Virus record (IMG/VR): IMGVR_UViG_3300027816_000051
Span: 186,001 to 250,000 of that record
DNA: 64,000 nt
Strand: one strand, 5' to 3'
Below the pieces are notes generated by a model. The model was not told the origin of the DNA and did not search any database. It worked only from the letters and a program-made list of their open reading frames with translations. Positions 31,888 to 49,697 of the stretch are shown in pieces; the stretch's first letter is position 1, and each line of letters begins with the position of its first letter. The position numbers were made by a program, and so were the translations under genes.

Positions 31888-31908
31888 GTTGTTTTATTTT
31901 AGGCCAAA

Positions 31909-32298: not shown

Positions 32299-32316
32299 CT
32301 TGATTGGTTTATAATA

Positions 32317-32348
32317 CAAATATAATACTAATTCTTTTATATTCCAAA
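32317..32348 (-). promoter_or_regulatory. Bacteroidota promoter, representative of about 28 similar ones between 27.5 and 49.6 kb
   Basis: TTTG-N20-TATATTTG on the - strand; similar elements near 30210, 30598, 31355, 33016, 34062, 37123, 40360, 42755, 44112, 46549, 46856. Confidence 0.88.
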
Positions 32349-32392
32349 TGTTTTTTTGCCAAACAAAAATCCCCCTGTGACGGGGGACCTTT

Positions 32393-32995: not shown

Positions 32996-33270
32996 TGTTA
33001 TGTTGTTTTATGATACAAATATAATACTGTTATTATTATATTCCAAATAATTTTTTATCTTTTTTATTGTTTTCTTGCCAACCAAGTTTTTGGATTAACC
33101 AGGGTCACCAGCAAAATGACCAGTAAAACTGGCTGTTGCAACCAGTCTGAAGCCAGGTGATTTTGGTTGGCACAACTTAAAGTGTTGATTTTATTAGGAT
33201 TACAGAATGCCAAACAAAATTCCGATGACCAGCATCATGCGCGCAACATCTTCAAGCAATAAAAAACCCC

Positions 33271-34041
33271 TCATTGTGAGGGGTCTACTATAAACTTACT
33301 ATCTTTTTGAGGTCGTTTTCGTGTGACTTTATATTTTAATCCCACAATAATGTCGTTCTCATCTCGATATCTCATATCATATAAGTCACCATCGATAACT
33401 TTTCTACCCCAAAACTTTTTGGGTATTTCTTTTTTGAAAACAACGGCAACTCGTATACCATTGTTCAACATACTAATACAATCTGAAAAGTTTGTACCAC
33501 TAAATGAAAATGTTAAGTCGTAGTTCTTATACTTCTTAACTAACTCCATTCGTTTACCCACTTTGCTGTAGTCGTAAAACATAACATTAGGAAACAATTG
33601 CAAAATGTTTTTTCTTTTACCATCTATCTCCATATGAAAAGATTCGGGTGAAATGTCTGAAGTGTTATTTAAACGAACACTAAAGTGATAACCTTGTTTT
33701 TCTGCCTTCTTTTTTGCCGCCTCAATTTCTGCAACCATCCATTGCATGAAATACTGGCGATGTTCGAAAAACAATTTTGTTTTTTTAATTCTACTCTCAG
33801 TAATCATGTCATCTCTCATGTTCATTCGATTCATACCAGATTCGTTTAAACATAGTGCAGTACACTCCGCGTTTCTCATTGGGCAAACTTCGTAACCACT
33901 TAAGTCCGCGGGTGCGAGGTAAAGACTGTAGGTTAATTCATCATACTTGTACGCCTTAGCGTGTTTTGATGTCAGGTTAACTGAACCTAAATAATTGATT
34001 CCAGTTTCCTTTCTGGCTTGGGTTTTATTTCTGTACTCCAT
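33271..34041 (-). CDS. Gp88-like phage protein
   Basis: LYLAP, CP..C...CL, RLNNTSDI, FYDYSK, NYDLTFSFS, DGDLYDMR. Confidence 0.75.
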   Translation of the reverse strand: MEYRNKTQARKETGINYLGSVNLTSKHAKAYKYDELTYSLYLAPADLSGYEVCPMRNAECTALCLNESGMNRMNMRDDMITESRIKKTKLFFEHRQYFMQWMVAEIEAAKKKAEKQGYHFSVRLNNTSDISPESFHMEIDGKRKNILQLFPNVMFYDYSKVGKRMELVKKYKNYDLTFSFSGTNFSDCISMLNNGIRVAVVFKKEIPKKFWGRKVIDGDLYDMRYRDENDIIVGLKYKVTRKRPQKDSKFIVDPSQ

Positions 34042-34272
34042 ATAATATTGGTTTAACAATACAAATATAAAACGAATTCTTTTATATTCCAAATTTATTT
34101 TTATTTTTTTTCTTCAGGAGGGACCTGTTCTTCCCAGGGCGATATTGTTTGGCGGGCGCCAAACTAATTTAATAGACGAACTGTGCAGCTCCTCCGCACA
34201 CATTCGAGCAATAAAAAACCCCCACATTTCTGTGAGGGTTTTTCGAACCGAACATTAAATCAATATACTAAA

Positions 34273-34650
34273 CTAAAGAACCCCTTCTATTGAATGTCCC
34301 TTTTTGGTGAGGTTTTTACCTTTACGTTCATAGTTGTTGTAGCCAACCAAAAACAAATCGTCTTTGGTCCCTAACACCATCGAACCTTCAAGTTTCATTC
34401 CACCATAAGTTACTTTCAGCTTACGCATAAAATCATTGAAAGAACGCTCAAGCTGTACACCAATCTTATCGGTAGGAGGAACTGGTGCATTTTCAATGTG
34501 ATAACGAGTACCAACACGAGAAAATTTAATTCCCACCATTTCCTTTTTCTCAAAGTTTGGTAAACTCTCATTAAGGCATTCACGAATTTCGTGCAAAGAC
34601 TTCTTCAGAGAATTAGCCGTAGTCTTTCTTGGTTTTTTTATCATATTCAA
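34273..34650 (-). CDS. Basic hypothetical protein
   Basis: Cassette with own promoter and terminator. Confidence 0.55.
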   Translation of the reverse strand: MNMIKKPRKTTANSLKKSLHEIRECLNESLPNFEKKEMVGIKFSRVGTRYHIENAPVPPTDKIGVQLERSFNDFMRKLKVTYGGMKLEGSMVLGTKDDLFLVGYNNYERKGKNLTKKGHSIEGVL

Positions 34651-34899
34651 GTTTTTGAATTACAGTACAAAAGTAATAAGAATATTTTCGATAAACAACA
34701 AATATTTTCACTTTGTTCAACTTTTTTGTCAAAACCTTATACAAAAAGTGTCTTTTTTATTGGATTACAAACATTTGTGTGTTGAAAACTCCGCCAAACA
34801 AAATCTGGAGTCGTCTTCAGGATGTTACATCTTGTGAAATTTTGAGCAAAAAAAAGGGGTAACCTTTCGGTCACCCCAATCACTAACCCTAATCCAAAG

Positions 34900-35655
34900 T
34901 TAGAAACGAAGGTTCAACTTGTCCTCATTACGACGCTTGTAGTTGTAAATGTCTTCAATCATTTCCGCGTATGATTTTTTATCACCACACATATAGATTG
35001 AACTTGGACGAAGTTTTACTTTATGTAAAAATTCTTCAAACTTAAAATCGGGTTTCTTTTCCATAATGGTAAGAATAGTACGAACAAATACCGATTTGTT
35101 GTAACCCTTTTCAAAGTAAGGTTTCAGTTGGAGTAGGTTATTCGCCCATTCTTTGGCGGTTTCCATATTACCAACAACAAACTTACCATCCGCAAAATCT
35201 TGTTTGTCACAATGACGAGTACCAGAATTTTGTAGTAACATAATTCTTTCGGTCAAAGAAAACATCGGAAACTCTTTTGAAAAATCTTCCAAAGTTTTGT
35301 AAGATTTGTTTCCTTGTTCGGAAAAACCATGAATGTAATCTTTCTTACCCCACTCTTTCATGTTCTGGTTGAACTTACGTGCGGCTTCAAAGATACCTTT
35401 CGTGGTGTTGGGGATTGAGTTGTCTACAATAAAGTAGATACCTTTACCCGCTTCTTTTGCTGCGGTTAGTCGGTGTTGTCCGTCTACAACCACATACTGG
35501 GAGTTTACAATGATTGGAACGAGTTTTAATCCGTCCTTCTTCATCGAGTCTGTAATACGCTTAACGCGTGGAGAGTCTACCTCACGATTTACATTGTGAA
35601 GTTTGAACATACCCAAATTTTGGGTGAACTTTACTTGAACATTTTTTGTACTCAT
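34900..35655 (-). CDS. ParB-N/Srx domain protein
   Basis: NREVD, PIIVN, VVDGQHRLTA. Confidence 0.8.
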   Translation of the reverse strand: MSTKNVQVKFTQNLGMFKLHNVNREVDSPRVKRITDSMKKDGLKLVPIIVNSQYVVVDGQHRLTAAKEAGKGIYFIVDNSIPNTTKGIFEAARKFNQNMKEWGKKDYIHGFSEQGNKSYKTLEDFSKEFPMFSLTERIMLLQNSGTRHCDKQDFADGKFVVGNMETAKEWANNLLQLKPYFEKGYNKSVFVRTILTIMEKKPDFKFEEFLHKVKLRPSSIYMCGDKKSYAEMIEDIYNYKRRNEDKLNLRF

Positions 35656-36028
35656 TTTCGTTTCTAATTTTAGATTAAAGATTTAATGTGGGTACAAAGA
35701 TATAATAGTTTTTCTTTTTTTCCAAATTTTTTTTAAAGTTTTTTCAAAAAAGTTTTTCCACATACATCTTTGACTTTGTGTATGACAAACATACTAAAAC
35801 TTTTAAGGATATTCACCAAGAATACTAGTATTTCTTGCCAAACAAAATCGTCCAGCCGTCGTCCAGTTTTCCCCCTGGCGTATGTTAAAACGAAGATTTT
35901 CAGTATTTTAGAAACAAAAAAAGGGATTCCGAAGAACCCCTTTAGTGTGTCAAACCAAACACAAATTACAACTATGAAATGTAATCCAATAAAAAGTTAC
36001 ACATCATATTTTACATTGTCAAGTGTTT

Positions 36029-37102
36029 TTAGATTACAGGTAATACATCAAGTTCTTTACCTTTTTCTTGGTAGAACAAACTTCCACCATCATTTCCCTC
36101 ATCATCCATAGAAGGAATACATAGTGTTCCGTTGTCCAACTCAATACAAATTGGTCTCTTGTACCAACCCATAAGTTCCATTTCCTCATCGGTAAGATAA
36201 CGAACTGATTTGATAACTCGTCCCTTTAGGACTTTCTCACTTTGATTTACCCAATGGGTAGTTATTTCTTGATTTGTCATACGAATGGTTTTTTACAAAG
36301 GTATAAAGATTATTTCTTTTTACAAGTTATTTTTGCCAATCAATATTCACTGTTCACCATGTCTTCGGGTATCTTTCCAAAATATCTTGGGGATAGAGAA
36401 CACCATTACCATTAAGTAATACATCCTCCCACCAACGAATACCAATTTGTAAACGGGGTACTGCGAATTTTGGAATGTCATCTTGATGGACTCTAAAGAA
36501 CACATCGTTTCTTCCACCCGTTTCAGGTTCGCCTGGTGTAGGTAGTGTTTCTACTTCCTCACAATATTTTGCACGAACACCGAATTCTTGTTTTAACCAC
36601 TTTTCGAATTCCTTAATGTTGGACTTACCGATAAGAGTTGCGGGCCAAACACAAACTTGACTGAAATTTTTCATGTTACAAATAATTTAATTGACAATAA
36701 TCCTCAAGGTCAACTAATGGTATGCGACCATATTTTACGGAAGAATAATACCCTTGAGTTTCGTACCCTTTCTTCCATTGTTCGAACGCCTTACACGCCG
36801 CTCTGTGCGACTTGTAGTAAGGTACATCCCTTTCGAGTGTGAACCCATCAGGGGATAAAATTTGAATTTTCTGTGCCATATGATTAACGATAAAGAGTTA
36901 CATAGTCACCGAAATACTTTTCAATCACGCCAATCAAATTCTCATAATCCCCACTCATCATCTCCTCTTGAATTTTCTTGGAGTCCAAACCGAGTTGTTT
37001 CGCCCATTTTGAGGCGAGACCAATAAGAACGAACGCGTTCCCATCAGGTCCTGTGAGGTCAATCTCAATACCTCCTTGTTTTTCATCAATAGATTTTATC
37101 AT
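36029..37102 (-). other. Four small hypothetical genes (36029-36280, 36354-36674, 36676-36879, 36884-37102)
   Basis: Co-oriented ORFs with promoters; motifs SMDDEGNDGG, GGRND and LTGPDGNAF. Confidence 0.6.
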
Positions 37103-37244
37103 TGTCTTGTCGTTTTATAATACAAATATAAATCAGTAATTAATATAATCCAAATATTTTTTTATTTTTCTTGCCAATCTAATTTCCGTCCTGAACCGTG
37201 ACTCAGAGTCCTGAGAAATAAAAAAACCCCTTTCGGGGTTTCTC

Positions 37245-37652
37245 TTACGAGGTGTACTTGTTATAGAACACTTCCATTCGTTCCATTACCACATCTAAAC
37301 TCCAACCACTTGTGTCTTGGTCGTTCCAATGAAAGTAACCCATTTGAAATTTCTCAACACAATTAGGTATTGATTTATCGTGTACGAACTCGGGGCAACC
37401 ACCATCAACAAAATCATCTTGGTAGTTACCACGATACTCAATTACGATATCCTTACCATTGAACTTTTTGGTGTAAGTTACTTTTTGAGTATACTTTTTG
37501 GTTTGAACTTTACCCTTTCGTGTCCAACCATGTTCGGACATAAAAACATCCATTTGTTGGTTAACACTTTCTTTTATCTTAGAAAGTTCATTCTCTTTTT
37601 CCTCTTTTTGTTTTTTCAAGAAGGAATAATAATCTTTAATTGTCGTGTACAT
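37245..37652 (-). CDS. Hypothetical protein
   Basis: Cassette with promoter and terminator (aaacccc-tttc-ggggttt). Confidence 0.6.
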   Translation of the reverse strand: MYTTIKDYYSFLKKQKEEKENELSKIKESVNQQMDVFMSEHGWTRKGKVQTKKYTQKVTYTKKFNGKDIVIEYRGNYQDDFVDGGCPEFVHDKSIPNCVEKFQMGYFHWNDQDTSGWSLDVVMERMEVFYNKYTS

Positions 37653-37977
37653 ATGTTTATTAATTTAACACCACAAATATAAAAGTATATAGAATATAAT
37701 CCAATAATTTTTTTATTTTTTTTGCCAAACAATTTGGTGGATTCCAGGTCCCCGCAGCAGGAAACCAGTAAAACCAGAAGCAATGACTAGAAAAAACCAG
37801 TTGTGCAACAGCAGCAACCAGCCCTTGATTTTGGTTGGCGAACCCAAACCATTGATTTTATTGGGTTTACAGAATGCCAAACAAAATCACGAACAGCAGC
37901 GCAACCAGCAGCAACTTCGGAGCAATAAAAAACCCCCACCTTTTGAGTGAGGGTTTTAACCAATAAAAATGAAACAA

Positions 37978-38667
37978 CTAACTCTCTGCGACCAATAGTT
38001 TTCGGTATTCTTTTTCGGTCAAGTGTCTAACCGAACCACTTTCACACTTCTTTTTCTTCTTAATAAGAACACAATCACCTTGCCGAACAATTTTCTCAAT
38101 TCCACCTTCTTTAATGTCTGTTTGAATTGTCCACGCGATTGCTTGAATAGGGGTAATCTTTTCACCAAAGTTCTCACTACTACTCAACCATTTGTCTTTG
38201 TTGTTAGTACGATAAACACTTTGTGCGTCCACCCAAATAAAATACTCCCTATCAGTTGAGGTGTCCTTACACTTTACAAAGTGAACATTATCTGGTCTAC
38301 GCCAACCAAATTCTGCACCTTCACCCCAAACATTTCCTTTTACTTCATAAAGTTCGTAGGTGTCCTCAAAGTTTTTCTTAATGAGTTCACCATTCTCACC
38401 AACCCAAAATGTTTCTTTTGAAATCGTTTCGGACTTAATAAGTGTGGGGTTCACTTCTTTGTAAATGTTTTCCAAACCCAAACAACCTACGGCGATACGC
38501 CTCTGTTCAATGTTTTGAATTTCGGTTGTAATTTCTTTGAAAGTAATAGGAACAATATCTTCCCAAATATCTTCCAAACCATTAAAGGGTGTATTACGAT
38601 ATTTTGTTTTTAATAAACGACAACCAATGTTGTAGTCAAAACGAGTGTTTTCAATTATGATTTTCAT
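37978..38667 (-). CDS. DUF6745-like protein
   Basis: NIEQRR, YELY, VKCKDTSTDREY, AIAWT. Confidence 0.5.
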   Translation of the reverse strand: MKIIIENTRFDYNIGCRLLKTKYRNTPFNGLEDIWEDIVPITFKEITTEIQNIEQRRIAVGCLGLENIYKEVNPTLIKSETISKETFWVGENGELIKKNFEDTYELYEVKGNVWGEGAEFGWRRPDNVHFVKCKDTSTDREYFIWVDAQSVYRTNNKDKWLSSSENFGEKITPIQAIAWTIQTDIKEGGIEKIVRQGDCVLIKKKKKCESGSVRHLTEKEYRKLLVAES

Positions 38668-38687
38668 TTCTTTTACTTTTTAATTGT

Positions 38688-39341
38688 TTACATATCACTT
38701 TCAGTCAATACCAAAAATTGTCTTGTTAGTGAAACGAATAATGTGTTATCTACAATTTTAGGTAATACATCACTATCCACTTCTTCTGTGTTGAATTGAA
38801 ACCAATCCTCTTGTTCGCCGTCTGCGTTTTCAAATTCGTGGTTCTCAACAACATCAGTAATCTTTTCCAATAATGTATCAGAAATCTGTTCTTCCTCATC
38901 ATTGAGAATACAATCACCTTTGTAGTTAATTGAACTTCCGTCTTGACTGCCAACCAAATTAAGGACTTTGGTTCTAATAAACTCAACCTCTTTTTCTGTG
39001 AGTTCAACAACAACTTCTTCTGTAAAACTCTCTGACCATTCCGCCTGTGCAGATTTGTAATACGAGAAAGTGGGGTTTTCCTCATCATCTTCATCAAGTG
39101 TAATCTCAACACTTCCAAATTCACCAATGTAGTGTCCGTCAGAGTTCACATAAAATTCTACTCTACGGAAAACATCATCATCAAAGAAACTATCAAGTTC
39201 ACCACTCTCAACATCTTTGTTTTCTGAATTGTAAAAATTAAAGTGATAATCATTCATACTATCACCACCACAACTAAATTCCATAGTTGCGCTTGTAATA
39301 CCTAACTCTTTCCAGAGTGCGATTGCTTCATTAGTTTGCAT
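38688..39341 (-). CDS. Acidic protein, DUF6878-like
   Basis: GITSATMEFSCGGDS N-terminus. Confidence 0.5.
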   Translation of the reverse strand: MQTNEAIALWKELGITSATMEFSCGGDSMNDYHFNFYNSENKDVESGELDSFFDDDVFRRVEFYVNSDGHYIGEFGSVEITLDEDDEENPTFSYYKSAQAEWSESFTEEVVVELTEKEVEFIRTKVLNLVGSQDGSSINYKGDCILNDEEEQISDTLLEKITDVVENHEFENADGEQEDWFQFNTEEVDSDVLPKIVDNTLFVSLTRQFLVLTESDM

Positions 39342-39735
39342 ATTCGTGGATTTTTTGGTTTAATTGTTTAACTACTTCGTACGCTTCGGGGTTGTCTAAA
39401 TCTTTTACCCCATTACACATCCAGGGTTGAACCTCTAAATGTTTAAGGTAATCTTGTGGGGTTGGAACGAACTTCATTCTAAAATCTTCTGCGATATGTA
39501 ACATCGCAATATCAACAACATCAACTGACTTACCATCACTATTAGTAATGTTGTAACCGAAGATTTTTGGAATGATAGTGTATGCGAACCAAGTGTTGTG
39601 GGTGAGTAACCGAGAACTATTATTGTTCATTGTCGCTTTCGGACTATCAATAAGTTCGTGGATAGGTAAATAATCTTCTACCTTACCACCCCAACGCTTG
39701 ACGCTGCTCTTTGAGTGAATTAGTGGGTTCGCCAT
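39331..39735 (-). CDS. DUF6915-like protein
   Basis: MANPLIHSKSSVKRWGGKVEDYLPIH..DS, HIAED, VPTPQD. Confidence 0.65.
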   Translation of the reverse strand: MANPLIHSKSSVKRWGGKVEDYLPIHELIDSPKATMNNNSSRLLTHNTWFAYTIIPKIFGYNITNSDGKSVDVVDIAMLHIAEDFRMKFVPTPQDYLKHLEVQPWMCNGVKDLDNPEAYEVVKQLNQKIHEYAN

Positions 39736-39737
39736 AG

Positions 39738-40016
39738 TTAATCCCAAATTTGAGTGATAGTACCTTCAAACGGATTGTACTCAACTTGTTTTCCCATAAC
39801 CCAATCACCTTGCTCAACTTTGAGTGGTTTGTGTTCGTTTGAGAAACTTCCATCGGGTTGTTCGTGTCTTAATACACTATCCTTTCTAACTTCAACTTCT
39901 GCGAAATCTGTTTGTGTTTCATCAACAATGAAATCACCATACAGAGTGTGCTGGTTAACACCCTCACCCTTTAAGAGTGTGTGTTTTTTCTTCGGAGTTA
40001 CTTTCTTGTTTTTCAT
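39738..40016 (-). CDS. Small His-containing conserved protein
   Basis: GEGVNQH, LRHE, EH, QVEYNP. Confidence 0.55.
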   Translation of the reverse strand: MKNKKVTPKKKHTLLKGEGVNQHTLYGDFIVDETQTDFAEVEVRKDSVLRHEQPDGSFSNEHKPLKVEQGDWVMGKQVEYNPFEGTITQIWD

Positions 40017-40776
40017 TTTTAGATTGTTTTATGGTACAAATATAAATCTATTTTTTGTATAAGTGAATTTTTTTTTTATTTTTTTCGCCAAACAAAAATC
40101 ACCCGTGAAGGTGATTTCGTCATTCGTTTCGTACAATATCTAATAGGTCATTCACAATTTCTTTTTTGGTTAATGAAAGAAGTTGATTACCTCTGAACGA
40201 CAACAACTTAAAGGTATTCATTCCTTTAATACCTTTTTCACCCTCTACATAGTAATCCATTTTCCACTTACCCAAATACTTAACATTCCCTATGTGTTTT
40301 ACATAGTAGACATTACCGATAGTTAGTTTTTCTAAAACCATATAAATTAATTTAGAACACAAATATAAATCTATATTTTGTATAATCCAAATTTATTTTT
40401 ATATTTCTTGCCAAACAAAAGTTATCCTGTGCTGCATCATCACCATCTTGGATACTTATTATTATGATAGAAGGGATACTTTATACATTAGGAGTTGAGT
40501 TCGTATTAGTCATTATATTGTTTTGTTATGAGTTAAGAAGACAACTAAAAGAAGATTATCAAGAGAAACCATTTAGATTCTGGGAAGATACATGAACATC
40601 TCCTGGTTGCGCGCAGCCCTCGATTTTGGTTGGCTCGAACCCAAAGTATTGATTTTATTGGGTTTAGAGTTTGCCAAACAATTTTCACTGTTTGCGCGTA
40701 GCTCACCATCAACTTTGGAGCAATAAAAAACCCCACATTTCTGTGGGGTTCTTATTAATTGAGTACCTAACCAATC

Positions 40777-41631
40777 TTAAACCAACTCAACCAATTCTTT
40801 GAAAATTTGACGTTCCCTTTGTCCATAGGTTCCAAACATCTTGTTTTCAGAGTTATCACCTTTACTTAAGGAATGTGTGGTGTACTTAGTAACCCCACTG
40901 AACAATCCCCAAAGGTTATCACCTTTCTCTTTTACTTCACCATTAAGGTCTACGTAGAAACGAGAAAGACGATTACGAGTCACGGTCGACACATCTTTGT
41001 CACTATTCAAATCAACATCTTTCATGATATTGAACAATGTACGTGTAACCCAATCCTCTTGTTTCTTGGTCATCTTCGTTTCAGAAAGTTTCTTAATGTC
41101 TTCGAACATTTCTTTTTCTTCCACGAGTACCCCCTCCAAACCACGACAGATATCATCGATTCTCATCTCCATGTTTTTGGTGTGACGAATTTTCGCATTC
41201 AAGTTACGGAACGCTGCGAAGAATGAATTCTGACAACTGATTGTAATATTACTTGGACCGAATGCCAAACTAGTTGACCCATCGAAGGAATTCACACCAG
41301 TGATGAAACCCTCAACTCTGTCATTGCCCAATTTCAAATCATTTGATTTCAATTGAAGGTATACTTTCTCACCCCCACCAAAGTAACCACCTTTGTGAAT
41401 TGGTAAACCAACCTGTTGAGATACCTTGTCTAGTAAATCAACCATCTGATGATTTTGATAAGGAAAGTAACCATCACCATGTACAGACAAAACAGTGTTT
41501 GTGTCCTCACGGATGATTGCTTTACTCTTAGGAACAATGATACCACTTTCTGTAGTGATACTTTCTTCTCTTACGGTCCAATTTAGGCCGACTTTGTTGA
41601 GAACTTGCTGTGTGCGATTTTCTTGTGACAT
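40777..41631 (-). CDS. DUF932/DUF945 family protein
   Basis: GLNWTV, YQN, NSFDGS, CQN, IRHT, LWGLFSGVTKYTTH. Confidence 0.8.
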   Translation of the reverse strand: MSQENRTQQVLNKVGLNWTVREESITTESGIIVPKSKAIIREDTNTVLSVHGDGYFPYQNHQMVDLLDKVSQQVGLPIHKGGYFGGGEKVYLQLKSNDLKLGNDRVEGFITGVNSFDGSTSLAFGPSNITISCQNSFFAAFRNLNAKIRHTKNMEMRIDDICRGLEGVLVEEKEMFEDIKKLSETKMTKKQEDWVTRTLFNIMKDVDLNSDKDVSTVTRNRLSRFYVDLNGEVKEKGDNLWGLFSGVTKYTTHSLSKGDNSENKMFGTYGQRERQIFKELVELV

Positions 41632-42035
41632 ATGGATGTTTTTTAATTTGATACAAATGTAATACACTTTTCATTATAATCCAAATAAATCTTTATTTTT
41701 TTTTTCTGACCCCAGAATTCACCGTACCATCTCAGAAATTGGTTGGCATCTGTCATACACCCGCCAAACTAAATTGAACACGGGATTTGCCGGCGACGAA
41801 TTTTTTTAGCAAACAAAAAACCCCCACATTTCTGTGAGGGTTCCTTAACCAAATAAAACTAATCTATGAACGACAAATCAAGTGTATTACACTTTAACCA
41901 AATATAGGAATTAAAACAAACATTGTCAATAGGAAAAACATAAGTATTACAATGCCACCCAAAATTCCATCCCAAAATTCCTTTCGGTCTTCTTGGTAAA
42001 CTTCTTTGAAAGTTGAAAACATTTCCTTTAACATA

Positions 42036-42395
42036 TCAATAATTGTTTTGATTATCGTAGTTGTCTCGGTAAACTCTTTTACGAGGTTGGTTGGTTCGTT
42101 GACCATTCCAATGGCGGTCTCCATTACCACCATTTTCGTAGTATGAGTTATTAATCATTTCATCAACCGATGGAACTTCAAAGTCCATATCACAACTTCC
42201 ATTCATCATCTTCCACTGAATTTCATAAATGGTTTTAATGTCTTCTTCAACATTGACATATGTACCATCTATGTATTCAATCTTCGTTGCTATCTTGTCG
42301 TTTCTTTTATCCAAGATACTAAAAATGTTTTTGACATTTTGTAGATTGACAAGTGTTGGGGTTCCTTTACCTTGATAAGTGAGTTTAATTAACAT
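42036..42395 (-). CDS. Hypothetical protein
   Basis: Own promoter; LVN..TKIEY..VNVEE pattern. Confidence 0.55.
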   Translation of the reverse strand: MLIKLTYQGKGTPTLVNLQNVKNIFSILDKRNDKIATKIEYIDGTYVNVEEDIKTIYEIQWKMMNGSCDMDFEVPSVDEMINNSYYENGGNGDRHWNGQRTNQPRKRVYRDNYDNQNNY

Positions 42396-42488
42396 TTTTT
42401 GTTTTTTTAATTATTGGACAAATATACAAATGAATTTTTGGAATATACAAACGATTGTGCCAATCAAAATCGGCGGTTCACCATCTCC

Positions 42489-42734
42489 TCAGATATTTCC
42501 CGAAAAGACAAGAAAATTGTTGGGTGGTAAATAAGTGTCGGGAGTGTCAATGATTTCATATTCATCTTCACCCTCAACTACACCAAGAGTCCTACCACTA
42601 TCCCAACGGACATTGATAACACCATGACCAACATGATAAATTGTTCCCATTGAACCTTCCTCAACGGGGTTAGGGTCGTTCTCCATTGAAACGAGACGAA
42701 TTCTTTTTCCGATTAATTTTTCGTTTATTTTCAT
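42489..42734 (-). CDS. DUF4314 family protein
   Basis: RIRLVSMENDPNPVEEGSMGTI..VRWDSGRTLG. Confidence 0.75.
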   Translation of the reverse strand: MKINEKLIGKRIRLVSMENDPNPVEEGSMGTIYHVGHGVINVRWDSGRTLGVVEGEDEYEIIDTPDTYLPPNNFLVFSGNI

Positions 42735-42809
42735 ATCTGTATTAGTTTATTAATACAAATATACAACTTATTTTATGATATCCAAATTTTTTTTAGGATA
42801 TTTTGCCAA

Positions 42810-43115
42810 TCAAATTGATGTCAATCTGAATATTCGTTTGAACTCTTTTTCAATTCTTCTGAATCTTATTTCGTCTTTTTCTCTAACATAACGCGATATT
42901 GTTTTGTTAAATTGAAAGTTAGAACGAGTAAGAAGATAGATAAATTTTCTCCTCTCCACTTTGTGACCTTCAAAGTTGTATGCCCATTCAACATCAACCG
43001 AAATATAATTTTCAGTTTCAATGATGTCACACACTTTACCTTCTTTTTCCGATTTTTTTAGGTAGTTCATTACTTCCTCATCGGTATTCAATGATATGTC
43101 GTTATAGTTTTTCAT
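42810..43115 (-). CDS. Hypothetical protein (probably leaderless)
   Basis: ATG 4 nt after TATATTTG; TGA stop inside the motif at 42805. Confidence 0.6.
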   Translation of the reverse strand: MKNYNDISLNTDEEVMNYLKKSEKEGKVCDIIETENYISVDVEWAYNFEGHKVERRKFIYLLTRSNFQFNKTISRYVREKDEIRFRRIEKEFKRIFRLTSI

Positions 43116-43350
43116 AATACAAATATACAATTCATTTTATGATATCCAAATTTATTTTAAAATATCCAATAACACCATCTACTGTTTCACCCGGCGTCGT
43201 AAAAATTTTGGTTGGCTGACCACATAAAACACTTAAATATAATAGGTTATCCGCCAAACAAAATCCCCACCAGGCGTGGGCTGGGCGAATTCTGGTATAA
43301 AAAAAAATCCCCGACTTTCGCCGAGGACTTTTCACCTAACCAAACAAAAT

Positions 43351-43758
43351 CTATTCGTATTCTTCTGCGTACAATTCACCCGTGAGGTACATGTCGTAAG
43401 TTTTTACTTCACCCTCCAACACTTCGGTTACTTTGTCAATAAGACTTTGGGTAATTTTCTTTACTCCATATTCTTCACGGACTTTCTTCTTTGAAACAAA
43501 GTACCAACCAACTTGTCCACTATCCCAACGACAACTGAACGGACTTGTGTTCATTGTAATTCCCGAGTGGTCGTACAAGTAAAGAGGTAAGATAACACAA
43601 ACATCTTCTTCTTTGATGATTGCGTTTTTCATTTCTTCCCAACCATTGTAGTTATTGTGGTTGTAGTCGTGTTTGTCTCCAAGGTCGTAACGTCCGTGAA
43701 AACACACCATTTTTCCGAGGTTGTCCCAACTCCGTGGGTTGTCAAAATCTTGATACAT
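43351..43758 (-). CDS. Conserved phage hypothetical protein
   Basis: PRSWDNLG, LPLYLYDHSGIT, WDSGQVG, YLTGE. Confidence 0.7.
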   Translation of the reverse strand: MYQDFDNPRSWDNLGKMVCFHGRYDLGDKHDYNHNNYNGWEEMKNAIIKEEDVCVILPLYLYDHSGITMNTSPFSCRWDSGQVGWYFVSKKKVREEYGVKKITQSLIDKVTEVLEGEVKTYDMYLTGELYAEEYE

Positions 43759-44367
43759 AGTCGTTATTATTTATTGGTTTATACAAATATATAACAATTT
43801 TATTCGTTTACCAAATCTTTTTTGCCAAACTTTATTCGTCTGTACGCCTTCGCCGAAGGTTTCGACTTCTGTAACATTTTCCTACGGACTATTTGTGCGA
43901 CGTGTCTCACACTTAATCCATTAAGGGTTTCATTCTTCATAGTTAAATTCGGTTTCATCTTCTATTTCTTTAAGTTTTTGTTCAAACTCATTTCTCATTT
44001 CATCGGTATCAAAGATTGGTTGTTTAGTTTCATCATCAATGTAATAGTAAACACCGACTTTGATTTCCGTTGGGATTGATTTCTTACTCATAGTAATTAT
44101 GTATTACGATACAAATATAAAACTATATTCAGTATAATCCAAATTTTTTTTCATACCTGTCGTCTCCATCCCACAAATTGTTTGGCGTGTTGTTTAATGT
44201 TTTGACCGAAAGATTAAACAAAACATATAGTGTAATACGCCTTTATTGAGTGTCATACAGTGCCAACCAAATTTAGGATACAGCACGTGCTGTGAGGTGA
44301 AACTAAAACGCAACAAAAAAGGGTAACATTTCTGCTACCCTTTTCCACCGCAACCGAGTTAAACCAA

Positions 44368-44916
44368 TTAAATCGACAAGTACAGGCGGTTGTGGTTGTA
44401 TAGTGCGACTGGGTTTTCTTCCGCAATCTTACCATATTCCTTTTTAATGATTTCGTACATTCTATCTTGTGGTTCGTTAATACACTCCGATAAAAGTTCA
44501 CAAAAACCATAGTTACTTTCATCAACTACTTCTTGTTCGGTACCAGGTAAACCACAATAGTACGCTTCCCCTACTTCGGAAATAAACATTCCCGAATAAA
44601 AACCTTTCAACTTAAAGTGATTAACGAATTTGTCCGCGTTACACCAAATAAAAATTGAATTGTCTTTTTCTTTTAATAGGTACACCATACTTTCATCAAT
44701 GATGAAACCATTTGAACCAGGAAATTGTCCAACCGAGAACAATCCCATAGGTGCTCCGTGTCCACACATTATTACTCTGTCGTGGGCGTCGATAAGTTTT
44801 CTAACTTCTTCTTTTGTTACCCCACCCGTGATAATTGTCTTATTCGGTATAGGTTCGTACACAATATCTAAAAATTGTGTCGATTTGTCTTTTGGATGAA
44901 TTACAAGTGTTTTCAT
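44368..44916 (-). CDS. Hypothetical protein with possible His-Cys peptidase dyad
   Basis: VIMCGHG and IFIWCNA. Confidence 0.5.
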   Translation of the reverse strand: MKTLVIHPKDKSTQFLDIVYEPIPNKTIITGGVTKEEVRKLIDAHDRVIMCGHGAPMGLFSVGQFPGSNGFIIDESMVYLLKEKDNSIFIWCNADKFVNHFKLKGFYSGMFISEVGEAYYCGLPGTEQEVVDESNYGFCELLSECINEPQDRMYEIIKKEYGKIAEENPVALYNHNRLYLSI

Positions 44917-45552
44917 TATTTTGTCGATTTTATGATACAAAGATATAACGAGTTTTTTATTCTACCAAATTTATTTTTATTTTTCTTGCCAACTAACCAA
45001 ATAGTAACTTACCATTCGGTAACATCTCAGAACCGCTGCGTCGGGAAAATTTTGGTTGGCGTTCTTACAATCTGTAAAGTAAAAACCTACTAATCTGTAA
45101 AGTGGATGCCAAACAATTTTCACCCTGAACCGTGACTCAGGACTTCAGGTCATAAAAAAACCCCAACTTTCGTTGAGGTCTTGTCTTTACTCTTCTTCAC
45201 TATCCCGAAAAATTTGAATCGCTTCGTTGAACAATTCATTCTGTAATTGAAATAGTGTATATCCACTCTTAATACATTCATCTACCCAATCATTATCACC
45301 TTCAAAAATTCCTTCCCAACTTCTATTCGGTGGTAAACCCATTTCGTTTTCGGTTTGAATATGTTGGTAAATTAAACCAACAACTTCTTGTCTTGTCATT
45401 TTAATTAGTTTTGGTGAAACACAAAGATAAAACATTTTTTCGTATAATCCAAATTTTTTTATATCTTTCTTGCCAACCAATTTTCACCCTGAACCGTGAC
45501 TCAAGTTCTTCAGGTCATAAAAAAACCCCCACCTTTCGGTGAGGGTTCGTTG

Positions 45553-45855
45553 TTAAAAAACTTCGGGTTCAAACTCAATTTGTGGGATACCCAATAGTTC
45601 GTAATCATCAAATTCCCCCCAATCGGGTTCATTGAAATAACGAAAACGGACATCCATAGTTCCATCTTCGTTCCACCAAATACGGACTTGGGTTCGGTGG
45701 TCGGAAATAAAAAACCCTTCAAGTTGTTCCAACTTCTCAATTAGAGGTTGAACATCCGAATCGTCAATAGTTACTTCTTCGTTATTAACGAGGAAATCAT
45801 CAACACATTCACAATTACCATCGTAGTCGATAGAGAAATCAATGTACTTTTCCAT
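45553..45855 (-). CDS. Acidic hypothetical protein
   Basis: Cassette with promoter and terminator. Confidence 0.6.
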   Translation of the reverse strand: MEKYIDFSIDYDGNCECVDDFLVNNEEVTIDDSDVQPLIEKLEQLEGFFISDHRTQVRIWWNEDGTMDVRFRYFNEPDWGEFDDYELLGIPQIEFEPEVF

Positions 45856-46144
45856 TTTGTTTTTTTTGTTTTATTGGTTTAACAATACAAATATAAATCA
45901 AATTTTAATATACACAACATTTGAGTATATTTTTTTTTATCTATTTTGCCAAACTACCACGAAACAGATGACCACCTGTCGTCAAATCCGAAAAATTGTT
46001 TGGCGTAGGTGTAATACAATGTATGATAGTGTCATACAACGCCAACCAAAATTCCGAGCTGCAACTGTGCAGCTCCACTGCACACATCCGAGCAAAAAAA
46101 ATCCCCGACTTTCGCCGAGGACTTTCCACCTAACTAAACCAAAC

Positions 46145-46519
46145 CTAATATGAACCAAACCTTTCTTTTAACGCCACGTCAAACGCGGACATAAATGTTA
46201 CTTGTTCTTTGACTTCTTCAAGTGAAAGTTTGGTATCACCATTTTCACCCGTTTCATCATCGTAACCCATTATCAACCCATTACCCGATAGAGGTTGTCG
46301 GTAATTTTTCAACTTGAAAAACTTTGTGTTTTCATCAACACTCATTATACCTTCTTCATCAACATACACATCGTTTTCGTTGTTGTAACTAACAATCTCA
46401 AAAATAGAACACTTTAAGTGTCCATAGATACTTGGTAACTGACTACCAGTTTCATCACGAACAACTTCAACTTCGGAAATTGTTTTGTTTTCTACGTCGA
46501 TTAAAATTCCTCTTGACAT
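46145..46519 (-). CDS. DUF3846-like protein
   Basis: DVYVDEEG, PLSGNGLIMG. Confidence 0.6.
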   Translation of the reverse strand: MSRGILIDVENKTISEVEVVRDETGSQLPSIYGHLKCSIFEIVSYNNENDVYVDEEGIMSVDENTKFFKLKNYRQPLSGNGLIMGYDDETGENGDTKLSLEEVKEQVTFMSAFDVALKERFGSY

Positions 46520-46614
46520 TTCTTTTTTGTTTTATTGGTTTAACGATACAAATATAATACTATTTCTTTTATATTCCAAATCTTTTTTTGCCAATCAAAT
46601 TCCAACATCTCCCG

Positions 46615-47980
46615 TCAGGAGGTCAGGTATTTCTTGTCTTTGACAAATTTGAGGTGTCTACATTCCTCAATAGTCAATCCCACAAATTCGTTGGGAGTGA
46701 AACTGATTTCATCGGGATAGTAGTCGAACAAAAATTCTTCTTGTCCATTTTCCATTGTAACCCACACTTGGGGCATCGGGTCGAACAAACTCTTTGGTTG
46801 TTCCGTAATACGAGATGAGATAACTTTCATGATTTTGTCTATTGGTTTAACTATACAAATATAAAACTATTTTTCTTATATACCAAATTTATTTTTATTT
46901 TTCTCAGAACCGTCGTCCGTATCCAAAAATTGGTTGGCGTAGGTGTAATACGATACTCACTATTTGTCATACGGCGCCAAACAATTTTCCTTCAGGGCCC
47001 TGACTCAAGTCCTGAAATGTTCACCTTATCAATAAGGGAAACAAATAAAAAACCCCCACCATTACTGATGAGGGTTAGTCTGAACCAACAAACTAAATTC
47101 AATTTAAACAAAGATTTTTCATAAGGTCGGAAACTTGGTAAGGTTTATAAAAATCAAAAACCTCTTGATGTTTTTCATCGGTTACAAAATTGTGGAACTC
47201 AACATTCAAAACGCCCTTGTCAAAGGTTGTTTCAACACTACACAAAATTTCGTGTCCATCCCTTTCAATGATTTGTGGAACAACTCGGTCGTACACCATT
47301 CTACCGATTGGGTCGTTTGGTACTGGTCCACCACCAACACCATACTCGGTTTCCCCTTCTTCGTTTACTTTTTTCAAAAGGTACATTTTTACATTGGGTA
47401 CACTATCGTTTGTTCCCAACATTTCTTCGGTACTCACTTTTGCGGAGTGTGTCATTCCTTGAATAAAATCTCTGATTTCTTCAATGTCTTTGTAATTGTT
47501 CATACTTGTTCTTTTTATTTGGTTTAACAATACGAATATAATATGATTAAACGGATATTCCAAATAAATTTATATTTTTTTTGCCAACTTACGATACAAG
47601 ATGTCGAGGGACAGAAGACGGATTTTGATTTTTGGTTGGCGAGCGTAATACGATAATACCAATGTGTAATACCCCGCCAAACAATTTTCTACGCTGCTCA
47701 AATCCACCACAGAACCTCGTGTAAATAAAAAACCCCCAACTTTCGTTGAGGGTTAATTACCATTTTGGAATTTTTAGAACCTTTGAGGTTGTGGTTTCTT
47801 TTTACTCTTGATGTAATTTTTGATGTCCTCAAACAAAATGATAAAGAACATACCAATACCCATACAAGAAAATAAGAACATACCCATTTGATTGTCTACG
47901 GGAATATCCCAAGTTAATGATACCCACATTGAGTAAACAATGAACCCGATGATTGCGATGTAAGGAAATAACTTTTTCAT
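46615..47980 (-). other. Three single-gene cassettes (46615-46830, 47099-47503, 47774-47980; the last is a two-TM protein)
   Basis: Each has its own -33/-7 promoter. Confidence 0.6.
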
Positions 47981-48078
47981 AATTGTTTCTTTTGTTTGGT
48001 TTAACGATACAAATATAATATAAGTTTCAATATAAACAACATTTTTTTATATCTATTTTGCCAACTTGATAACACCAA

Positions 48079-48276
48079 CAACTTCTCCTTCGAGCAACAG
48101 CGCATGGTTGGAAATTAGATTGGCGGTTTTAGCAACACCTAAAGCATTTAGCAACTTCTCCTTCGAGCAATTGCGCATGAGGGAAATTAGATTGGCGGTT
48201 TTAGCAACACCTAAAGCATTTAGCAACTTCTCCTTCGAGCAATTGCGCATGAGGGAAATTAGATTGGCGGTTTTAG
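48079..48276. repeat. 72-bp tandem repeat, about 2.7 copies
   Basis: Unit caacttctccttcgagcaattgcgcatgagggaaattagattggcggttttagcaacacctaaagcatttag starts at 48079 (variant), 48152 and 48224. Confidence 0.95.
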
Positions 48277-48479
48277 TCCGTGTCGGCGCATTTGCAACAA
48301 ACTCGCCAAACAATATCTAACAGCGCAGCCCGGGTGAAATTCTGTTCCCAAATTTTTTCTTACTTTTTTTATTCGTTCCCGCCAAACAACATTCCCGATG
48401 GTTCACGGGGTTCGGAAAATTTCACACACAAAAAAAGGGGATACTTTCGTACCCCCTTCGGTTTTTCTTTCGGTGTGTG

Positions 48480-49043
48480 TTACTCCTTTACAATTTCGTA
48501 CCTATCTCCGTTTACCGAAATTTCAAGTACATTGTCAAGGTCGGGTGTTATCGGTTTAACCTCTCTATCCAAACCTTGTTTTTCGTTACTACTCTTTCTA
48601 TCACTTATCCACTTTTCAAACAATGTTTTGTCTATTGAGTTACCACGAAATTCGTACTCCGTTGTTCCTTTGATTTCGGGAAACCACTCTACCATAAGGT
48701 AGGTTTTTGTTTCGGTGTCGGTGTCAGTCAGTAATGATTTACTGATATGTTTTTTACCCGTTGGACTTTCAACCTTAAAGGTGTTCGGGTCTTTACCCTC
48801 TTTCATAAGGTTGTTGTGTACCCTCTTTTCGTAGTCAGTTACCAAACGATAAGTTTTAGATGATACCTTAAAGATTTCCTTATAGTAAGGGTTTAATTCT
48901 TTGGTGTCCTTTGTCTTTTGTAAAACTTCTTTGTAAAGGGTTTTCATTTTTACCCCTACAAAAGTGTTAGGACTTTTTTCCTCAATCTCTTTGATGATAC
49001 TGATGATTTCGGACTTCGTTACTTTTTTGATTTCTTTGTTCAT
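48480..49043 (-). CDS. Hypothetical protein
   Basis: Cassette with promoter and terminator; NPY, DYEKRV motifs. Confidence 0.65.
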   Translation of the reverse strand: MNKEIKKVTKSEIISIIKEIEEKSPNTFVGVKMKTLYKEVLQKTKDTKELNPYYKEIFKVSSKTYRLVTDYEKRVHNNLMKEGKDPNTFKVESPTGKKHISKSLLTDTDTETKTYLMVEWFPEIKGTTEYEFRGNSIDKTLFEKWISDRKSSNEKQGLDREVKPITPDLDNVLEISVNGDRYEIVKE

Positions 49044-49304
49044 ACTTTTATTTTTTAGTTTGTTAGGAATACACAAATATAAAACACTATTTCATATAAA
49101 CAAAACTTTTTTTTATTTATTTCGCCAGACTACCACGAACCCGATGACCACCTGTCGTCCGTATCCGAAAATTGGTTGGCGAGTCGGTGCAATTATGGTC
49201 TATTCGCCAATCAAATTTCCACCTGAACCATCTCCTCAAGTTCACACAAATCTTCTTGGACAAAAAAAATCCCCACCTTTCGGTGAGGACTTTCGGTGTG
49301 GTGT

Positions 49305-49562
49305 TTAATCTTCTTCACCCTCTTCAATTCCCGACATTACAACTTCGGTCAAGTGATTAACAAAGGTTTCGTACAACTTGTAATCCAACATAACCTTTTG
49401 TCTTGTGTGTACAAGGGTTACGTTCTTTTCGTTTTTTTCATCGTACAACTCATTTGTTAGGTCATTCGTGAAATCAGTACCATTCCACTCGTAGTCAATT
49501 TGGTTTGACAATAACTGGTCAATTTTACTTTTAACCAAGTTTTTAACTTTTTGTGTGTCCAT
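49305..49562 (-). CDS. Hypothetical protein (first gene of the - strand block)
   Basis: TATCTTTG upstream, terminator downstream. Confidence 0.6.
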   Translation of the reverse strand: MDTQKVKNLVKSKIDQLLSNQIDYEWNGTDFTNDLTNELYDEKNEKNVTLVHTRQKVMLDYKLYETFVNHLTEVVMSGIEEGEED

Positions 49563-49697
49563 ATTTTTATTAATTGGTTTGTGGGTACAAAGATATAACA
49601 ATTTTAAAATAATACAAGTGAAAGTTATTCACATCCTGAATGTGGATTTTGACCACCCTGAACCTGACGACCCCCATCCCACAAATTGTTTGGCATA

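What the first reader, a model, noticed from the sequence alone, without database searches (positions are those of the whole stretch)
33077..49694. GC-rich 25-80 bp segments next to the motifs are dense in palindromic, restriction-like sites
Seen: the AT end of most intergenic motifs is followed by a short segment unlike the AT-rich genome. Examples: GCGCGC (near 33239, 40609), GCCGGC (41789), GAATTC (41715, 43287), CACGTG (44284), GGGCCC (46995), CCCGGG (48329), CAATTGCGCA (72-bp repeat), GGTACC and CCTCAGG (25 kb cluster). There are also runs of CCAG/GCAGC (33097-33158, 37744-37822, 37894-37912) and CCTGA/TCAGG/GACTC. GCGC occurs more than ten times here, while I noticed only about three elsewhere. 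Speculative inference: protein-flanked decoy or bait sites for host restriction or methylation enzymes, or a methylation-sensing panel. They could also simply be GC-rich structural spacers.
Basis: partly seen in the sequence, partly recalled or inferred. Interest (0 to 1): 0.7.

Follow-up and report, generated by a model that had tools for sequence, protein, structure and literature searches.

The report
Phage early-gene cassette spacers, not restriction decoys
The GC-rich stretches are real, but they are fast-changing spacers of fixed length beside a 12-base motif in the promoter–terminator cassettes of a giant freshwater phage's early genes, and they hold no more restriction-like palindromes than their base composition predicts.

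Summary
The window lies in a 288-kb uncultivated jumbo phage that encodes ribosomal protein bS21 and uses Bacteroidota-type promoters. Window 24.2-49.7 kb holds about 47 small minus-strand early genes. Nearly every gene has its own promoter and intrinsic terminator.

Confirmed:
- The motif GCCAAMCWAWWT occurs 42 times (0.17 expected), only in this block.
- Each copy is followed by about 25-30 nt of 54-58% GC, against 25-30% GC in the flanks.
- 14 of the window's 16 GCGC sites lie here.

Not confirmed:
- Six-base palindromes number 17, against 17-21 in shuffles.
- Four-base palindromes are depleted.
- The segments' typical words (TCAGG, CCTGAA, GACTCA) are not avoided elsewhere in the genome.
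- GATC, which the genome truly avoids (0 sites, about 800 expected), is also absent from the segments.

The segments are length-constrained: the median distance from motif to terminator is 40 nt. They are unstructured and non-coding, and they evolve faster than third codon positions. Whole-gene gains and losses between relatives break inside the repeated promoter, motif and spacer, as in T4 PeSL cassettes. A sister clade has the same layout with a different anchor, TTACTGGGG.

Best model: a protein-binding upstream element plus spacer, which also acts as a recombination substrate. The binding protein is unknown.

The parts
24185..49601 (-). Block of about 47 small early or host-takeover genes, all on the minus strand. 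Most are ORFans. Recognised domains are DUF932, GP88, a ParB/Srx N-terminal domain, DUF3846, DUF4314 and DUF6915.
   Evidence: ORF lists. Pfam and PHROG scans.
30207..49627 (-). At least 23 copies of a Bacteroidota-type promoter. On the minus strand each reads A-tract, TTTGG (-33), about 19 nt, TAnnTTTGTA (-7). Examples on the + strand are 33013-33055, 37120-37162, 44109-44151 and 46853-46895.
   Evidence: Repeat families D1-D4. 63 promoters were scored across five phages. The -33/-7 consensus is from established knowledge of Bacteroidota sigma-A promoters.
24728..49694 (.). Anchor motif GCCAAMCWAWWT: 42 exact copies, 31 on the + strand and 11 on the - strand, plus degenerate copies. It occurs in three settings: singly next to the promoter A-tract; as an inverted pair around an AT-rich centre; and in direct tandem at 25010-25181.
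   Evidence: 42 copies against 0.17 expected. Position weight matrix from 169 units. The promoter-proximal copy ends 18-19 nt before the -33 element in 17 of 63 promoters, 9 nt before in 4, and 29-31 nt before in 4.
33221..33257 (.). GC-rich spacer holding GCGCGC, between a motif and a terminator. It is one of 41 such segments.
   Evidence: Segment table. GC profile. Site coordinates. Motif-to-terminator distance has median 40 nt and interquartile range 35-43 nt, n = 66.
48110..48253 (.). Two exact tandem copies of a 72-bp unit, each holding a minus-oriented motif and a spacer with CAATTGCGCA. A third, diverged copy lies just to the left (about 48038-48109; its motif is at 48113-48124).
   Evidence: Repeat family D20. 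Units at 48124, 48196 and 48268.
46939..46975 (.). AT-rich centre between inverted motif copies, with the direct words GTAATAC and GTCATAC about 21 nt apart. Other centres are at 33172-33208, 37840-37875, 40635-40672, 43217-43252, 44187-44261, 45061-45107, 46005-46040 and 47641-47675. At 34142-34169 the two half-sites abut and form a palindrome.
   Evidence: Read directly from the sequence.
33264..33286 (-). Intrinsic terminator (GC hairpin followed by a T-run on the minus strand), one of about 20. Others are at 34856-34877, 37929-37957, 45523-45548, 47051-47076, 47731-47754 and 48434-48459.
   Evidence: Terminator scan: 25 found against 11.4 +/- 3.5 in shuffles, with nearly all strong ones on the minus strand. 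Repeat families D6, D7 and D10.
45106..45471 (-). A whole gene cassette that is present here and absent from a relative about 90% identical in nucleotide sequence. It is bounded by two copies, 97% identical over 33 nt, of motif plus spacer (GCCAAMCAATTTTCACCCTGAACCGTGACTCA). Similar cassette indels lie at 30217-30604, 37171-37721 and 42809-43163.
   Evidence: Alignment of the window with L007 and L008 and their indel breakpoints. Repeat family D9.

Best explanation
What is shown. The segments belong to a repeated regulatory cassette that separates the early genes of a jumbo phage. The phage uses Bacteroidota-type promoters and belongs with the bS21-encoding freshwater phages, whose predicted hosts are Bacteroidetes. 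Read in gene direction, each cassette has this order:
1. the gene's stop codon;
2. an intrinsic terminator;
3. about 40 bp of GC-rich spacer;
4. the anchor motif ATTTTGTTTGGC;
5. optionally an AT-rich centre, an inverted anchor and a second GC-rich spacer;
6. an A-tract;
7. a host-type -33/-7 promoter and the next gene.
The repeated promoter, anchor, spacer and terminator are also the points where whole gene cassettes are gained and lost between relatives, as with PeSL cassettes in T4-type phages.

What is inferred. The anchor is the binding site of a sequence-specific protein, phage-encoded or delivered with the virion, that acts on early promoters and/or insulates neighbouring transcription units. 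The GC-rich stretch is a spacer or non-specific footprint next to that site. Its length and its non-AT composition are selected; most of its sequence is not. It therefore turns over quickly by mutation and by exchange between cassettes. Restriction-like palindromes appear in it only because any 51% GC sequence stands out in a 33% GC genome.
For: - Motif enrichment and confinement to the early block.
- A GC-rich flank of fixed polarity and length.
- The promoter-proximal anchor sits at phased distances of 9, 18-19 and 29-31 nt from the -33 element.
- In one place the half-sites abut as a palindrome, at 34142-34169.
- A sister clade (DUF932 protein 65% identical) keeps the layout but uses a different, mutually exclusive anchor, TTACTGGGG/CCCCAGTAA. 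It has 50-63 copies per about 20 kb in the longest loci and the same AT tail followed by a GC-rich flank. This is what co-evolution of a site with its binding protein would produce.
- Against the relative about 90% identical in nucleotide sequence, spacer identity is 0.76. Third codon positions score 0.86, the motif 0.89, promoters 0.905 and terminators 0.93. Against a more distant relative the spacer scores 0.57 and third positions 0.71.
- The spacers show no excess folding (mean z = -0.28), no open reading frame, no match elsewhere in the genome and no Rfam family.
- Cassette indel breakpoints fall inside the repeated promoter, motif, or motif plus spacer.
- PeSL precedent: PMC4122927 and PMC2839356.
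Against: - No binding protein was identified. The block's ParB/Srx-domain protein shows no recognisable DNA-binding domain, and the complex prediction was not run.
- The spacers are not sequence-free. Words such as GTTCAGG occur 8:0 on the gene-sense strand in this block and 26:4 when relatives are included, and boxes such as CCTGTCGTC recur. These point to extra, unexplained specific contacts or signals.
- The two copies of an inverted anchor pair differ systematically (GCCAACC against GCCAAAC), and their separation ranges from 2 to 75 nt. That is unusual for a simple dimeric operator.
- No strand-resolved transcript data exist for this phage. The RNA-library contigs that match are too sparse to use.
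- The relatives are not independent samples, and gene calls and segment limits are my own.
Confidence: 0.5

Rival explanations
1. One reading: the segments are decoy or bait sites for host restriction or methylation enzymes, or a methylation-sensing panel.
For: GCGC is depleted genome-wide (45 sites, observed/expected 0.2-0.42), yet 10 sites lie in the 1.6 kb of segments. In the sister clade, GATC is depleted about three-fold in coding DNA but is at expectation in non-coding DNA, often at a fixed place before the anchor. The phage carries two DNA N-methyltransferase genes.
Against: Palindromic hexamers are at chance level and tetramers are depleted. The GCGC excess over the segments' own composition is marginal. 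GATC, with 0 sites in 288 kb, is also absent from the segments, where 5-6 are expected. GACGTC is also absent genome-wide (0 against 22 expected), but under one copy is expected in the segments, so it does not bear on the question. The segments' typical words are not avoided elsewhere.
Confidence: 0.05
2. A by-product of recombination only. The anchor and spacer have no function of their own and are hitch-hiking junction sequences of cassettes shuffled by homologous recombination between promoters and terminators.
For: Cassette indels break in the repeats. The same spacer type sits at different loci in different phages: the GAGCTGCAACTGTGCAGCTCC type lies downstream of DUF932 in L008-L011 but at 46053 and 34170 in the window. 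Spacers evolve faster than third codon positions.
Against: In a 33% GC genome, neutral DNA should decay towards AT. Instead the GC content (about 55%), the polarity relative to the anchor and the roughly 40-nt length are held across five phages, and in a clade with a different anchor. The phased spacing to the -33 element is also not expected of junk.
Confidence: 0.2
3. The anchor is a promoter, or the 5' handle, of short RNAs whose variable GC-rich part acts as a guide or antisense sequence.
For: Regular units of 12 nt constant plus about 35-45 nt variable, sometimes in direct tandem (25010-25213). The variable parts evolve fast.
Against: No -10-like element lies at a fixed distance after the anchor. 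No phage RNA polymerase was found; for the single-subunit type the search was uninformative, since the family also failed to ring in the control genomes. The spacers' G-over-C bias follows the gene direction, not the anchor's orientation. No complementary target exists elsewhere in the phage beyond chance. There is no structure and no Rfam match. The repeat is far shorter than a CRISPR repeat.
Confidence: 0.07
4. The inverted anchor pairs with their centres are miniature transposable elements (MITE-like) inserted into GC-rich targets.
For: Inverted 12-14 nt ends flank AT-rich centres of a few recurring types. A 40-nt hairpin-like insert sits in the centre at about 44190-44230 here, while a similar one sits in a different centre in L008.
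Against: There is no consistent target-site duplication (read). No transposase or tyrosine recombinase was detected. There are no copies outside the early block. Single and tandem direct anchors carry the same GC-rich flank without forming an element.
Confidence: 0.08

Closest known systems
PeSL (promoter-early stem-loop) cassettes of T4-type phages (PMC2839356, PMC4122927)
   Same: Composite terminator and early-promoter repeats lie between small genes of unknown function in a hyperplastic early region. Indels between close relatives have their ends in the repeats.
   Different: This is a different phage group with Bacteroidota-type promoters rather than sigma-70 ones. It also has an extra lineage-specific anchor motif, often in three copies of alternating orientation, each with a length-constrained GC-rich spacer. 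That feature is not part of the PeSL description.
REP/BIME elements of enterobacteria (from my own knowledge)
   Same: High-copy intergenic elements placed after terminators, often as inverted pairs around a central AT-rich part that binds a host protein.
   Different: REPs are GC-rich imperfect palindromes that fold. These spacers show no excess folding, and the conserved part is the AT-rich anchor, not the GC-rich part.
Operator networks of plasmid global regulators such as KorB of IncP plasmids (from my own knowledge)
   Same: A short palindrome-type site (T-rich outside, GC inside) is repeated next to, or at various distances upstream of, many promoters of one replicon. A ParB-family gene lies in the same region.
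   Different: No binding was shown. The ParB/Srx-domain protein here lacks a detectable helix-turn-helix domain. The sites are mostly split half-sites with variable gaps.
Restriction-site avoidance in phage genomes (from my own knowledge)
   Same: GATC and GACGTC are absent and GCGC, CCCGGG and GCCGGC are depleted genome-wide.
   Different: That is a property of the whole genome and is the opposite of offering decoy sites. The segments share the GATC avoidance.

Membership tests
PeSL-type mobile regulatory cassettes | A conserved composite of intrinsic terminator (stem-loop) and early promoter, repeated between genes | tested here: met
   Promoter families D1-D4 and terminator families D6, D7 and D10. 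Terminator scan of 25 against 11.4 expected.
PeSL-type mobile regulatory cassettes | Lies in a variable region of small genes, mostly of unknown function | tested here: met
   About 47 small genes, most without any family match. Gene content differs between relatives.
PeSL-type mobile regulatory cassettes | Insertions and deletions between close relatives end inside the repeats | tested here: met
   Four whole-cassette indels against L007 break in the promoter, the anchor, or the anchor plus spacer.
PeSL-type mobile regulatory cassettes | Described in T4-type myoviruses with sigma-70 early promoters | tested here: not met
   The promoters are of the TTTG / TAnnTTTG type. The phage is a bS21-encoding jumbo myovirus. 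So this works like a PeSL but is not homologous to one.
Integron attC array (or a cluster of attC sites without an integrase) | Integron integrase (tyrosine recombinase) nearby | tested here: not met
   No PF00589 match in the 288-kb record, while the control genomes all gave matches.
Integron attC array (or a cluster of attC sites without an integrase) | Core sites RYYYAAC ... GTTRRRY bounding an imperfect hairpin | tested here: not met
   GCCAAAC/GTTTGGC fails the consensus at one position. The centres hold direct rather than inverted words, and there is no excess folding.
CRISPR mini-array or solitary repeat units | Direct repeats of about 23 nt or more separating unique spacers of foreign origin | tested here: not met
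   The conserved part is only 12-13 nt. Units occur in both orientations, and spacer types recur at several loci.
REP/BIME | The GC-rich unit is an imperfect palindrome that forms a stable hairpin | tested here: not met
   Mean folding z = -0.28 over 40 segments, not significant. A hairpin abutting the anchor occurs in 18% of units against 11% in shuffles.
   Only GCGC is both depleted genome-wide and present here, and only at about its compositional expectation.

The most novel reading that the evidence does not exclude
Every early cassette of this phage clade carries the docking site of a lineage-specific DNA-binding protein. The site is GCCAAAC-type in this clade and TTACTGGGG-type in the sister clade. 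Together with its roughly 40-bp GC-rich footprint, the bound protein coats the first-expressed DNA. It would act as a roadblock insulator behind each terminator and an upstream activator of each promoter, and it would shield the covered DNA. Shielding would explain why sites that are counter-selected elsewhere (GCGC here, GATC in the sister clade) survive only in these segments.
Probability: 0.15. Interest if true: 0.65.

Novelty: new variant of a known kind. Interest (0 to 1): 0.4.

Why it matters
The early regions of uncultivated jumbo phages are where host-takeover and anti-defence genes accumulate. Their regulatory layout in Bacteroidota phages is essentially undescribed.

This block gives a clean, repeated cassette: terminator, a spacer of fixed length and free sequence, a lineage-specific anchor, and a host-type promoter. 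That has three uses:
- It helps to delimit early genes in metagenomic phage genomes.
- It explains how those genes are swapped between relatives.
- It supplies defined parts (promoters, terminators, candidate insulators) for Bacteroidota genetics.

It also shows how a GC-rich island in an AT-rich genome can look 'restriction-like' with no enrichment beyond composition.

Tried and rejected
- blastn of 7.9 kb of the block against 50,697 phage records gave no match.
- Rfam search at a permissive threshold gave only three sub-threshold chance hits.
- Coding potential of the spacers: no frame stays open in either sense.
- Guide-target idea: the longest exact matches of spacers to the rest of the genome are no longer than those of shuffled spacers.
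- Hairpin or second-terminator idea: there is no general excess of folding. Only a minority of units (18% against 11% in shuffles) place a hairpin against the anchor's T-run, for example at 32370-32389 and 40099-40115.
- Pairing between inverted anchors: the two copies of a pair differ systematically (GCCAACC against GCCAAAC), so pairing is not maintained (read).
- Phage RNA polymerase promoter idea: a T7-promoter-like string lies at 46946-46963, but the beta-prime search and ten scanned large proteins revealed no polymerase. The single-subunit search was uninformative because the controls did not ring either. The string is not conserved in the other centres.
- Sigma-factor promoter idea: the phage has sigma-70-family genes, but there is no conserved -10-like position after the anchor.
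- Metatranscriptome contigs from four RNA runs were laid on 43,001-49,000. They were too sparse, carry no strand information and break at repeats, so they are not evidence either way.
It is no evidence either way.
- The ParB/Srx-domain protein was searched against sequences of solved structures, with no match.

Full report
**Context.** The window is bases 186,001-250,000 of a single 288,260-bp IMG/VR virus record with 33.5% GC and an estimated completeness of 92%. The record encodes a tail sheath, DNA polymerase, ribonucleotide reductase and an SbcC-like protein. It also encodes at least one clear sigma-70-family factor, two DNA N-methyltransferases and ribosomal protein bS21. The bS21 gene places it among the freshwater bS21-encoding jumbo phages, whose predicted hosts are Bacteroidetes (PMC9723584). 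Near-identical DNA is present in many lake metagenomes. No tyrosine recombinase or multisubunit RNA polymerase domain was detected. The search for a single-subunit polymerase was uninformative, because the family also failed to ring in the control genomes.

**Anatomy.** Window 24.2-49.7 kb is a block of about 47 small genes, all on the minus strand.
- Most genes are ORFans. The recognisable domains are DUF932, GP88, a ParB/Srx N-terminal domain, DUF3846, DUF4314 and DUF6915.
- Nearly every gene or short operon has its own promoter copy. On the minus strand this reads A-tract, TTTGG, about 19 nt, TAnnTTTGTA, which is the Bacteroidota sigma-A pattern (repeat families D1-D4).
- Each also has its own intrinsic terminator, a GC hairpin followed by a T-run on the minus strand. 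The scan found 25 against 11.4 +/- 3.5 in shuffles (families D6, D7 and D10).
It has 42 exact copies against 0.17 expected, all between 24,728 and 49,694. It is essentially absent from the other 260 kb, where the few regex hits at 110-120 kb are a coding proline/threonine repeat.
- Long intergenic regions of 230-500 nt read on the + strand as: promoter (reverse complement), A/T tract, anchor (+), GC-rich spacer, anchor (-), AT-rich centre, anchor (+), GC-rich spacer, terminator.
- Short intergenic regions keep one anchor and one spacer.
- At 34142-34169 the inverted anchors abut as a palindrome. At 25010-25213 four units stand in direct tandem.

**The observation.** The GC-rich flank is real and has a fixed polarity. 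Averaged over 54 non-coding units, GC is 0.54-0.58 for about 25-30 nt after the AAAT end of the anchor and 0.25-0.30 on both sides. The same holds over 169 units from five phages. 14 of the window's 16 GCGC sites lie at 33,239-48,323.

**Palindromes.** The claim of density does not survive a composition control.
- In 41 merged non-coding segments (1,591 nt, 51% GC) there are 17 palindromic hexamers. Mononucleotide shuffles give 20.9 +/- 4.5 and dinucleotide-preserving shuffles give 17.4 +/- 4.0.
- Palindromic tetramers number 51 against 90 and 70, a depletion.
- GCGC is 9 against 5.8 (p = 0.12) or 4.1 (p = 0.012), counted with one copy of the duplicated 72-bp repeat removed. Several of these sites belong to one spacer family.
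- What is enriched are non-palindromic words. TCAGG and CCTGA are 6-8 times over expectation; CCTGAA and CTTCAG are 18-20 times over.

**Restriction pressure on the genome.** The phage does avoid sites, but genome-wide.
- GATC: 0 sites against about 800-890 expected.
- GACGTC: 0 against 22.
- GCGC: 45 sites, observed/expected 0.2-0.42.
- CCCGGG and GCCGGC: observed/expected 0.25-0.32.

The segments share the GATC avoidance, with 0 sites where 5-6 are expected (p <= 0.003). The words typical of the segments are not avoided elsewhere, at observed/expected 0.9-1.3.

One residue remains. GCGC is depleted elsewhere but not in the segments. In a sister clade, GATC is depleted about three-fold in coding DNA but sits at expectation in non-coding DNA, often as CTGATCRTC at a fixed place before that clade's anchor. 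Segment function seems to outweigh a partial restriction cost. Where the cost became absolute (GATC in this clade), the box reads CCTGTCGTC instead of CCTGATCGTC. That last link is my inference.

**What the spacers are not.**
- They show no general excess of secondary structure: mean z = -0.28 over 40 segments. A minority do form the hairpin of a terminator that uses the anchor's T-run as its tail, 18% against 11% in shuffles.
- No reading frame is kept open.
- They match nothing else in the phage beyond chance.
- They match no Rfam family.
- Their G-over-C bias follows gene direction whichever way the adjacent anchor points. This argues against transcription starting at the anchor.

**What constrains the spacers.**
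- Length. The distance from anchor to the terminator's A-run has a median of 40 nt and an interquartile range of 35-43 nt. 89% of 66 cases in five phages fall within 28-46 nt.
- Composition, as described above.
- Sequence hardly at all. The table gives nucleotide identity to two relatives by sequence class.

| Sequence class | Identity to L007 (relative about 90% identical) | Identity to L008 (more distant) |
|---|---|---|
| Spacers | 0.76 | 0.57 (with 39% gaps) |
| Third codon positions | 0.86 | 0.71 |
| Anchor motif | 0.89 | 0.885 |
| Promoters | 0.905 | 0.815 |
| Terminators | 0.93 | 0.873 |

- Spacer types also move between loci. The GAGCTGCAACTGTGCAGCTCC type lies downstream of the DUF932 gene in four relatives, but at 46053 and 34170 in this phage.

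**The anchor behaves like a protein site tied to the promoter.** The promoter-proximal copy ends 18-19 nt before the -33 TTTG in 17 of 63 promoters, 9 nt before in 4, and 29-31 nt before in 4. These distances are steps of about one helical turn. A sister clade (loci L012-L017, DUF932 protein 65% identical) has the same layout of terminator, roughly 38-nt GC-rich spacer, anchor, short centre, inverted anchor, spacer and promoter. Its anchor is TTACTGGGG/CCCCAGTAA, with 50-63 copies per about 20 kb in the longest loci, and GCCAAAC-type sites are almost absent. This clade has none of the other type. The polarity of GC core, AT tail and GC-rich flank is the same in both. A switch of anchor with the architecture retained is what co-evolution of a site and its binding protein would produce. 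The protein itself is not identified.

**The repeats are recombination substrates.** Against the relative about 90% identical in nucleotide sequence, four whole cassettes differ, and each difference ends inside a repeat.
- 30217-30604 lies between two promoter copies.
- 37171-37721 lies between two 'TTTTTATTTTT|TTGCCAA' junctions.
- 42809-43163 lies between two promoter-plus-anchor junctions.
- 45106-45471 lies between two copies, 97% identical over 33 nt, of anchor plus spacer (family D9).

This is the behaviour described for PeSL cassettes in T4-type phages (PMC2839356, PMC4122927). Some anchors overlap the end of a gene: ATT-TAG supplies the last codon and the stop at 30260, 31405, 31903 and 25628. 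A few lie inside coding sequence. Both fit frequent rearrangement at these sites.

**Verdict.** The most likely account is a protein-binding upstream or insulator element with a length- and composition-constrained spacer, embedded in PeSL-like shuffling cassettes. I put this at about 0.5. The binding protein, the reason the spacer must be GC-rich, and the strand-specific words GTTCAGG (8:0 here, 26:4 with relatives) and GACGACAGGTGG remain unexplained.

**Limits.** Gene calls and segment boundaries are my own. The relatives are not independent samples. There are no strand-resolved expression data, and the one protein-DNA prediction was not run.

Noticed in passing
whole genome (G000) and window 1-64000: GATC is completely absent from the 288-kb genome, against about 800 expected. 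GACGTC is also absent, against 22 expected. Relatives L007-L011 likewise have no GATC, whereas the more distant L012-L017 have 13-37 per locus. The phage nevertheless carries a D12-class (Dam-family) adenine methyltransferase gene at genome 150,847-151,572 and an N6/N4 methyltransferase at 166,488-167,213, outside the window. No C5 methyltransferase was found.
   Followed up: partly
window 49695-49790: An odd C-rich tract (ATACCCCCTATACCTACCCCCTCCCCTCAAACCATACCCCCCTCCCTCCCGTATCCCCCC...) marks the upstream edge of the early block, right after the last anchor copy. A similar tract flanks the last anchor in L009. It could be a genome end, a packaging site or an origin.
   Followed up: no
window 40464-40595 (+ strand): A 43-codon ORF on the strand opposite to the block encodes a small hydrophobic peptide (MIEGILYTLGVEFVLVIILFCYELRRQLKEDYQEKPFRFWEDT). 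Its start region is conserved in L008 and L009. It lies inside one of the longest intergenic regions.
   Followed up: no
window about 44190-44230; L008 centre orthologous to window 41747: A roughly 40-nt insert with inverted ends (GTTTAAT...ATTAAAC) sits in the AT-rich centre at this locus in the window and in L007, but is missing there in L008. L008 carries a similar insert in a different centre. It may be a tiny mobile hairpin.
   Followed up: no
window 46946-46963: TAATACGATACTCACTAT resembles the T7 promoter (TAATACGACTCACTATAG) apart from two extra bases. It is not conserved in the other centres and no phage RNA polymerase was found, so it is probably chance.
   Followed up: partly
window 33099-33153 and 37744-37818: In the two long CCAG-rich spacers, CCAG recurs at steps of about 9-13 nt or 21-23 nt, which is roughly helical phasing. 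Both elements share the centre TTGATTTTATTGGGTTTACAGAAT, as does a third at 40635-40672.
   Followed up: no
genome 107,949-124,367 (outside the window): A single 5,472-codon ORF made largely of proline/threonine-rich repeats (...ACNCCNACNAAYACN...). It raises local GC to 0.44 and gives spurious hits to the anchor regex.
   Followed up: no
window 30260, 31405, 31903, 25628: The anchor GCCAAACTAAAT overlaps gene ends. On the minus strand ATT-TAG supplies the final isoleucine codon and the stop of four genes, so these genes run straight into the next cassette without a terminator.
   Followed up: partly
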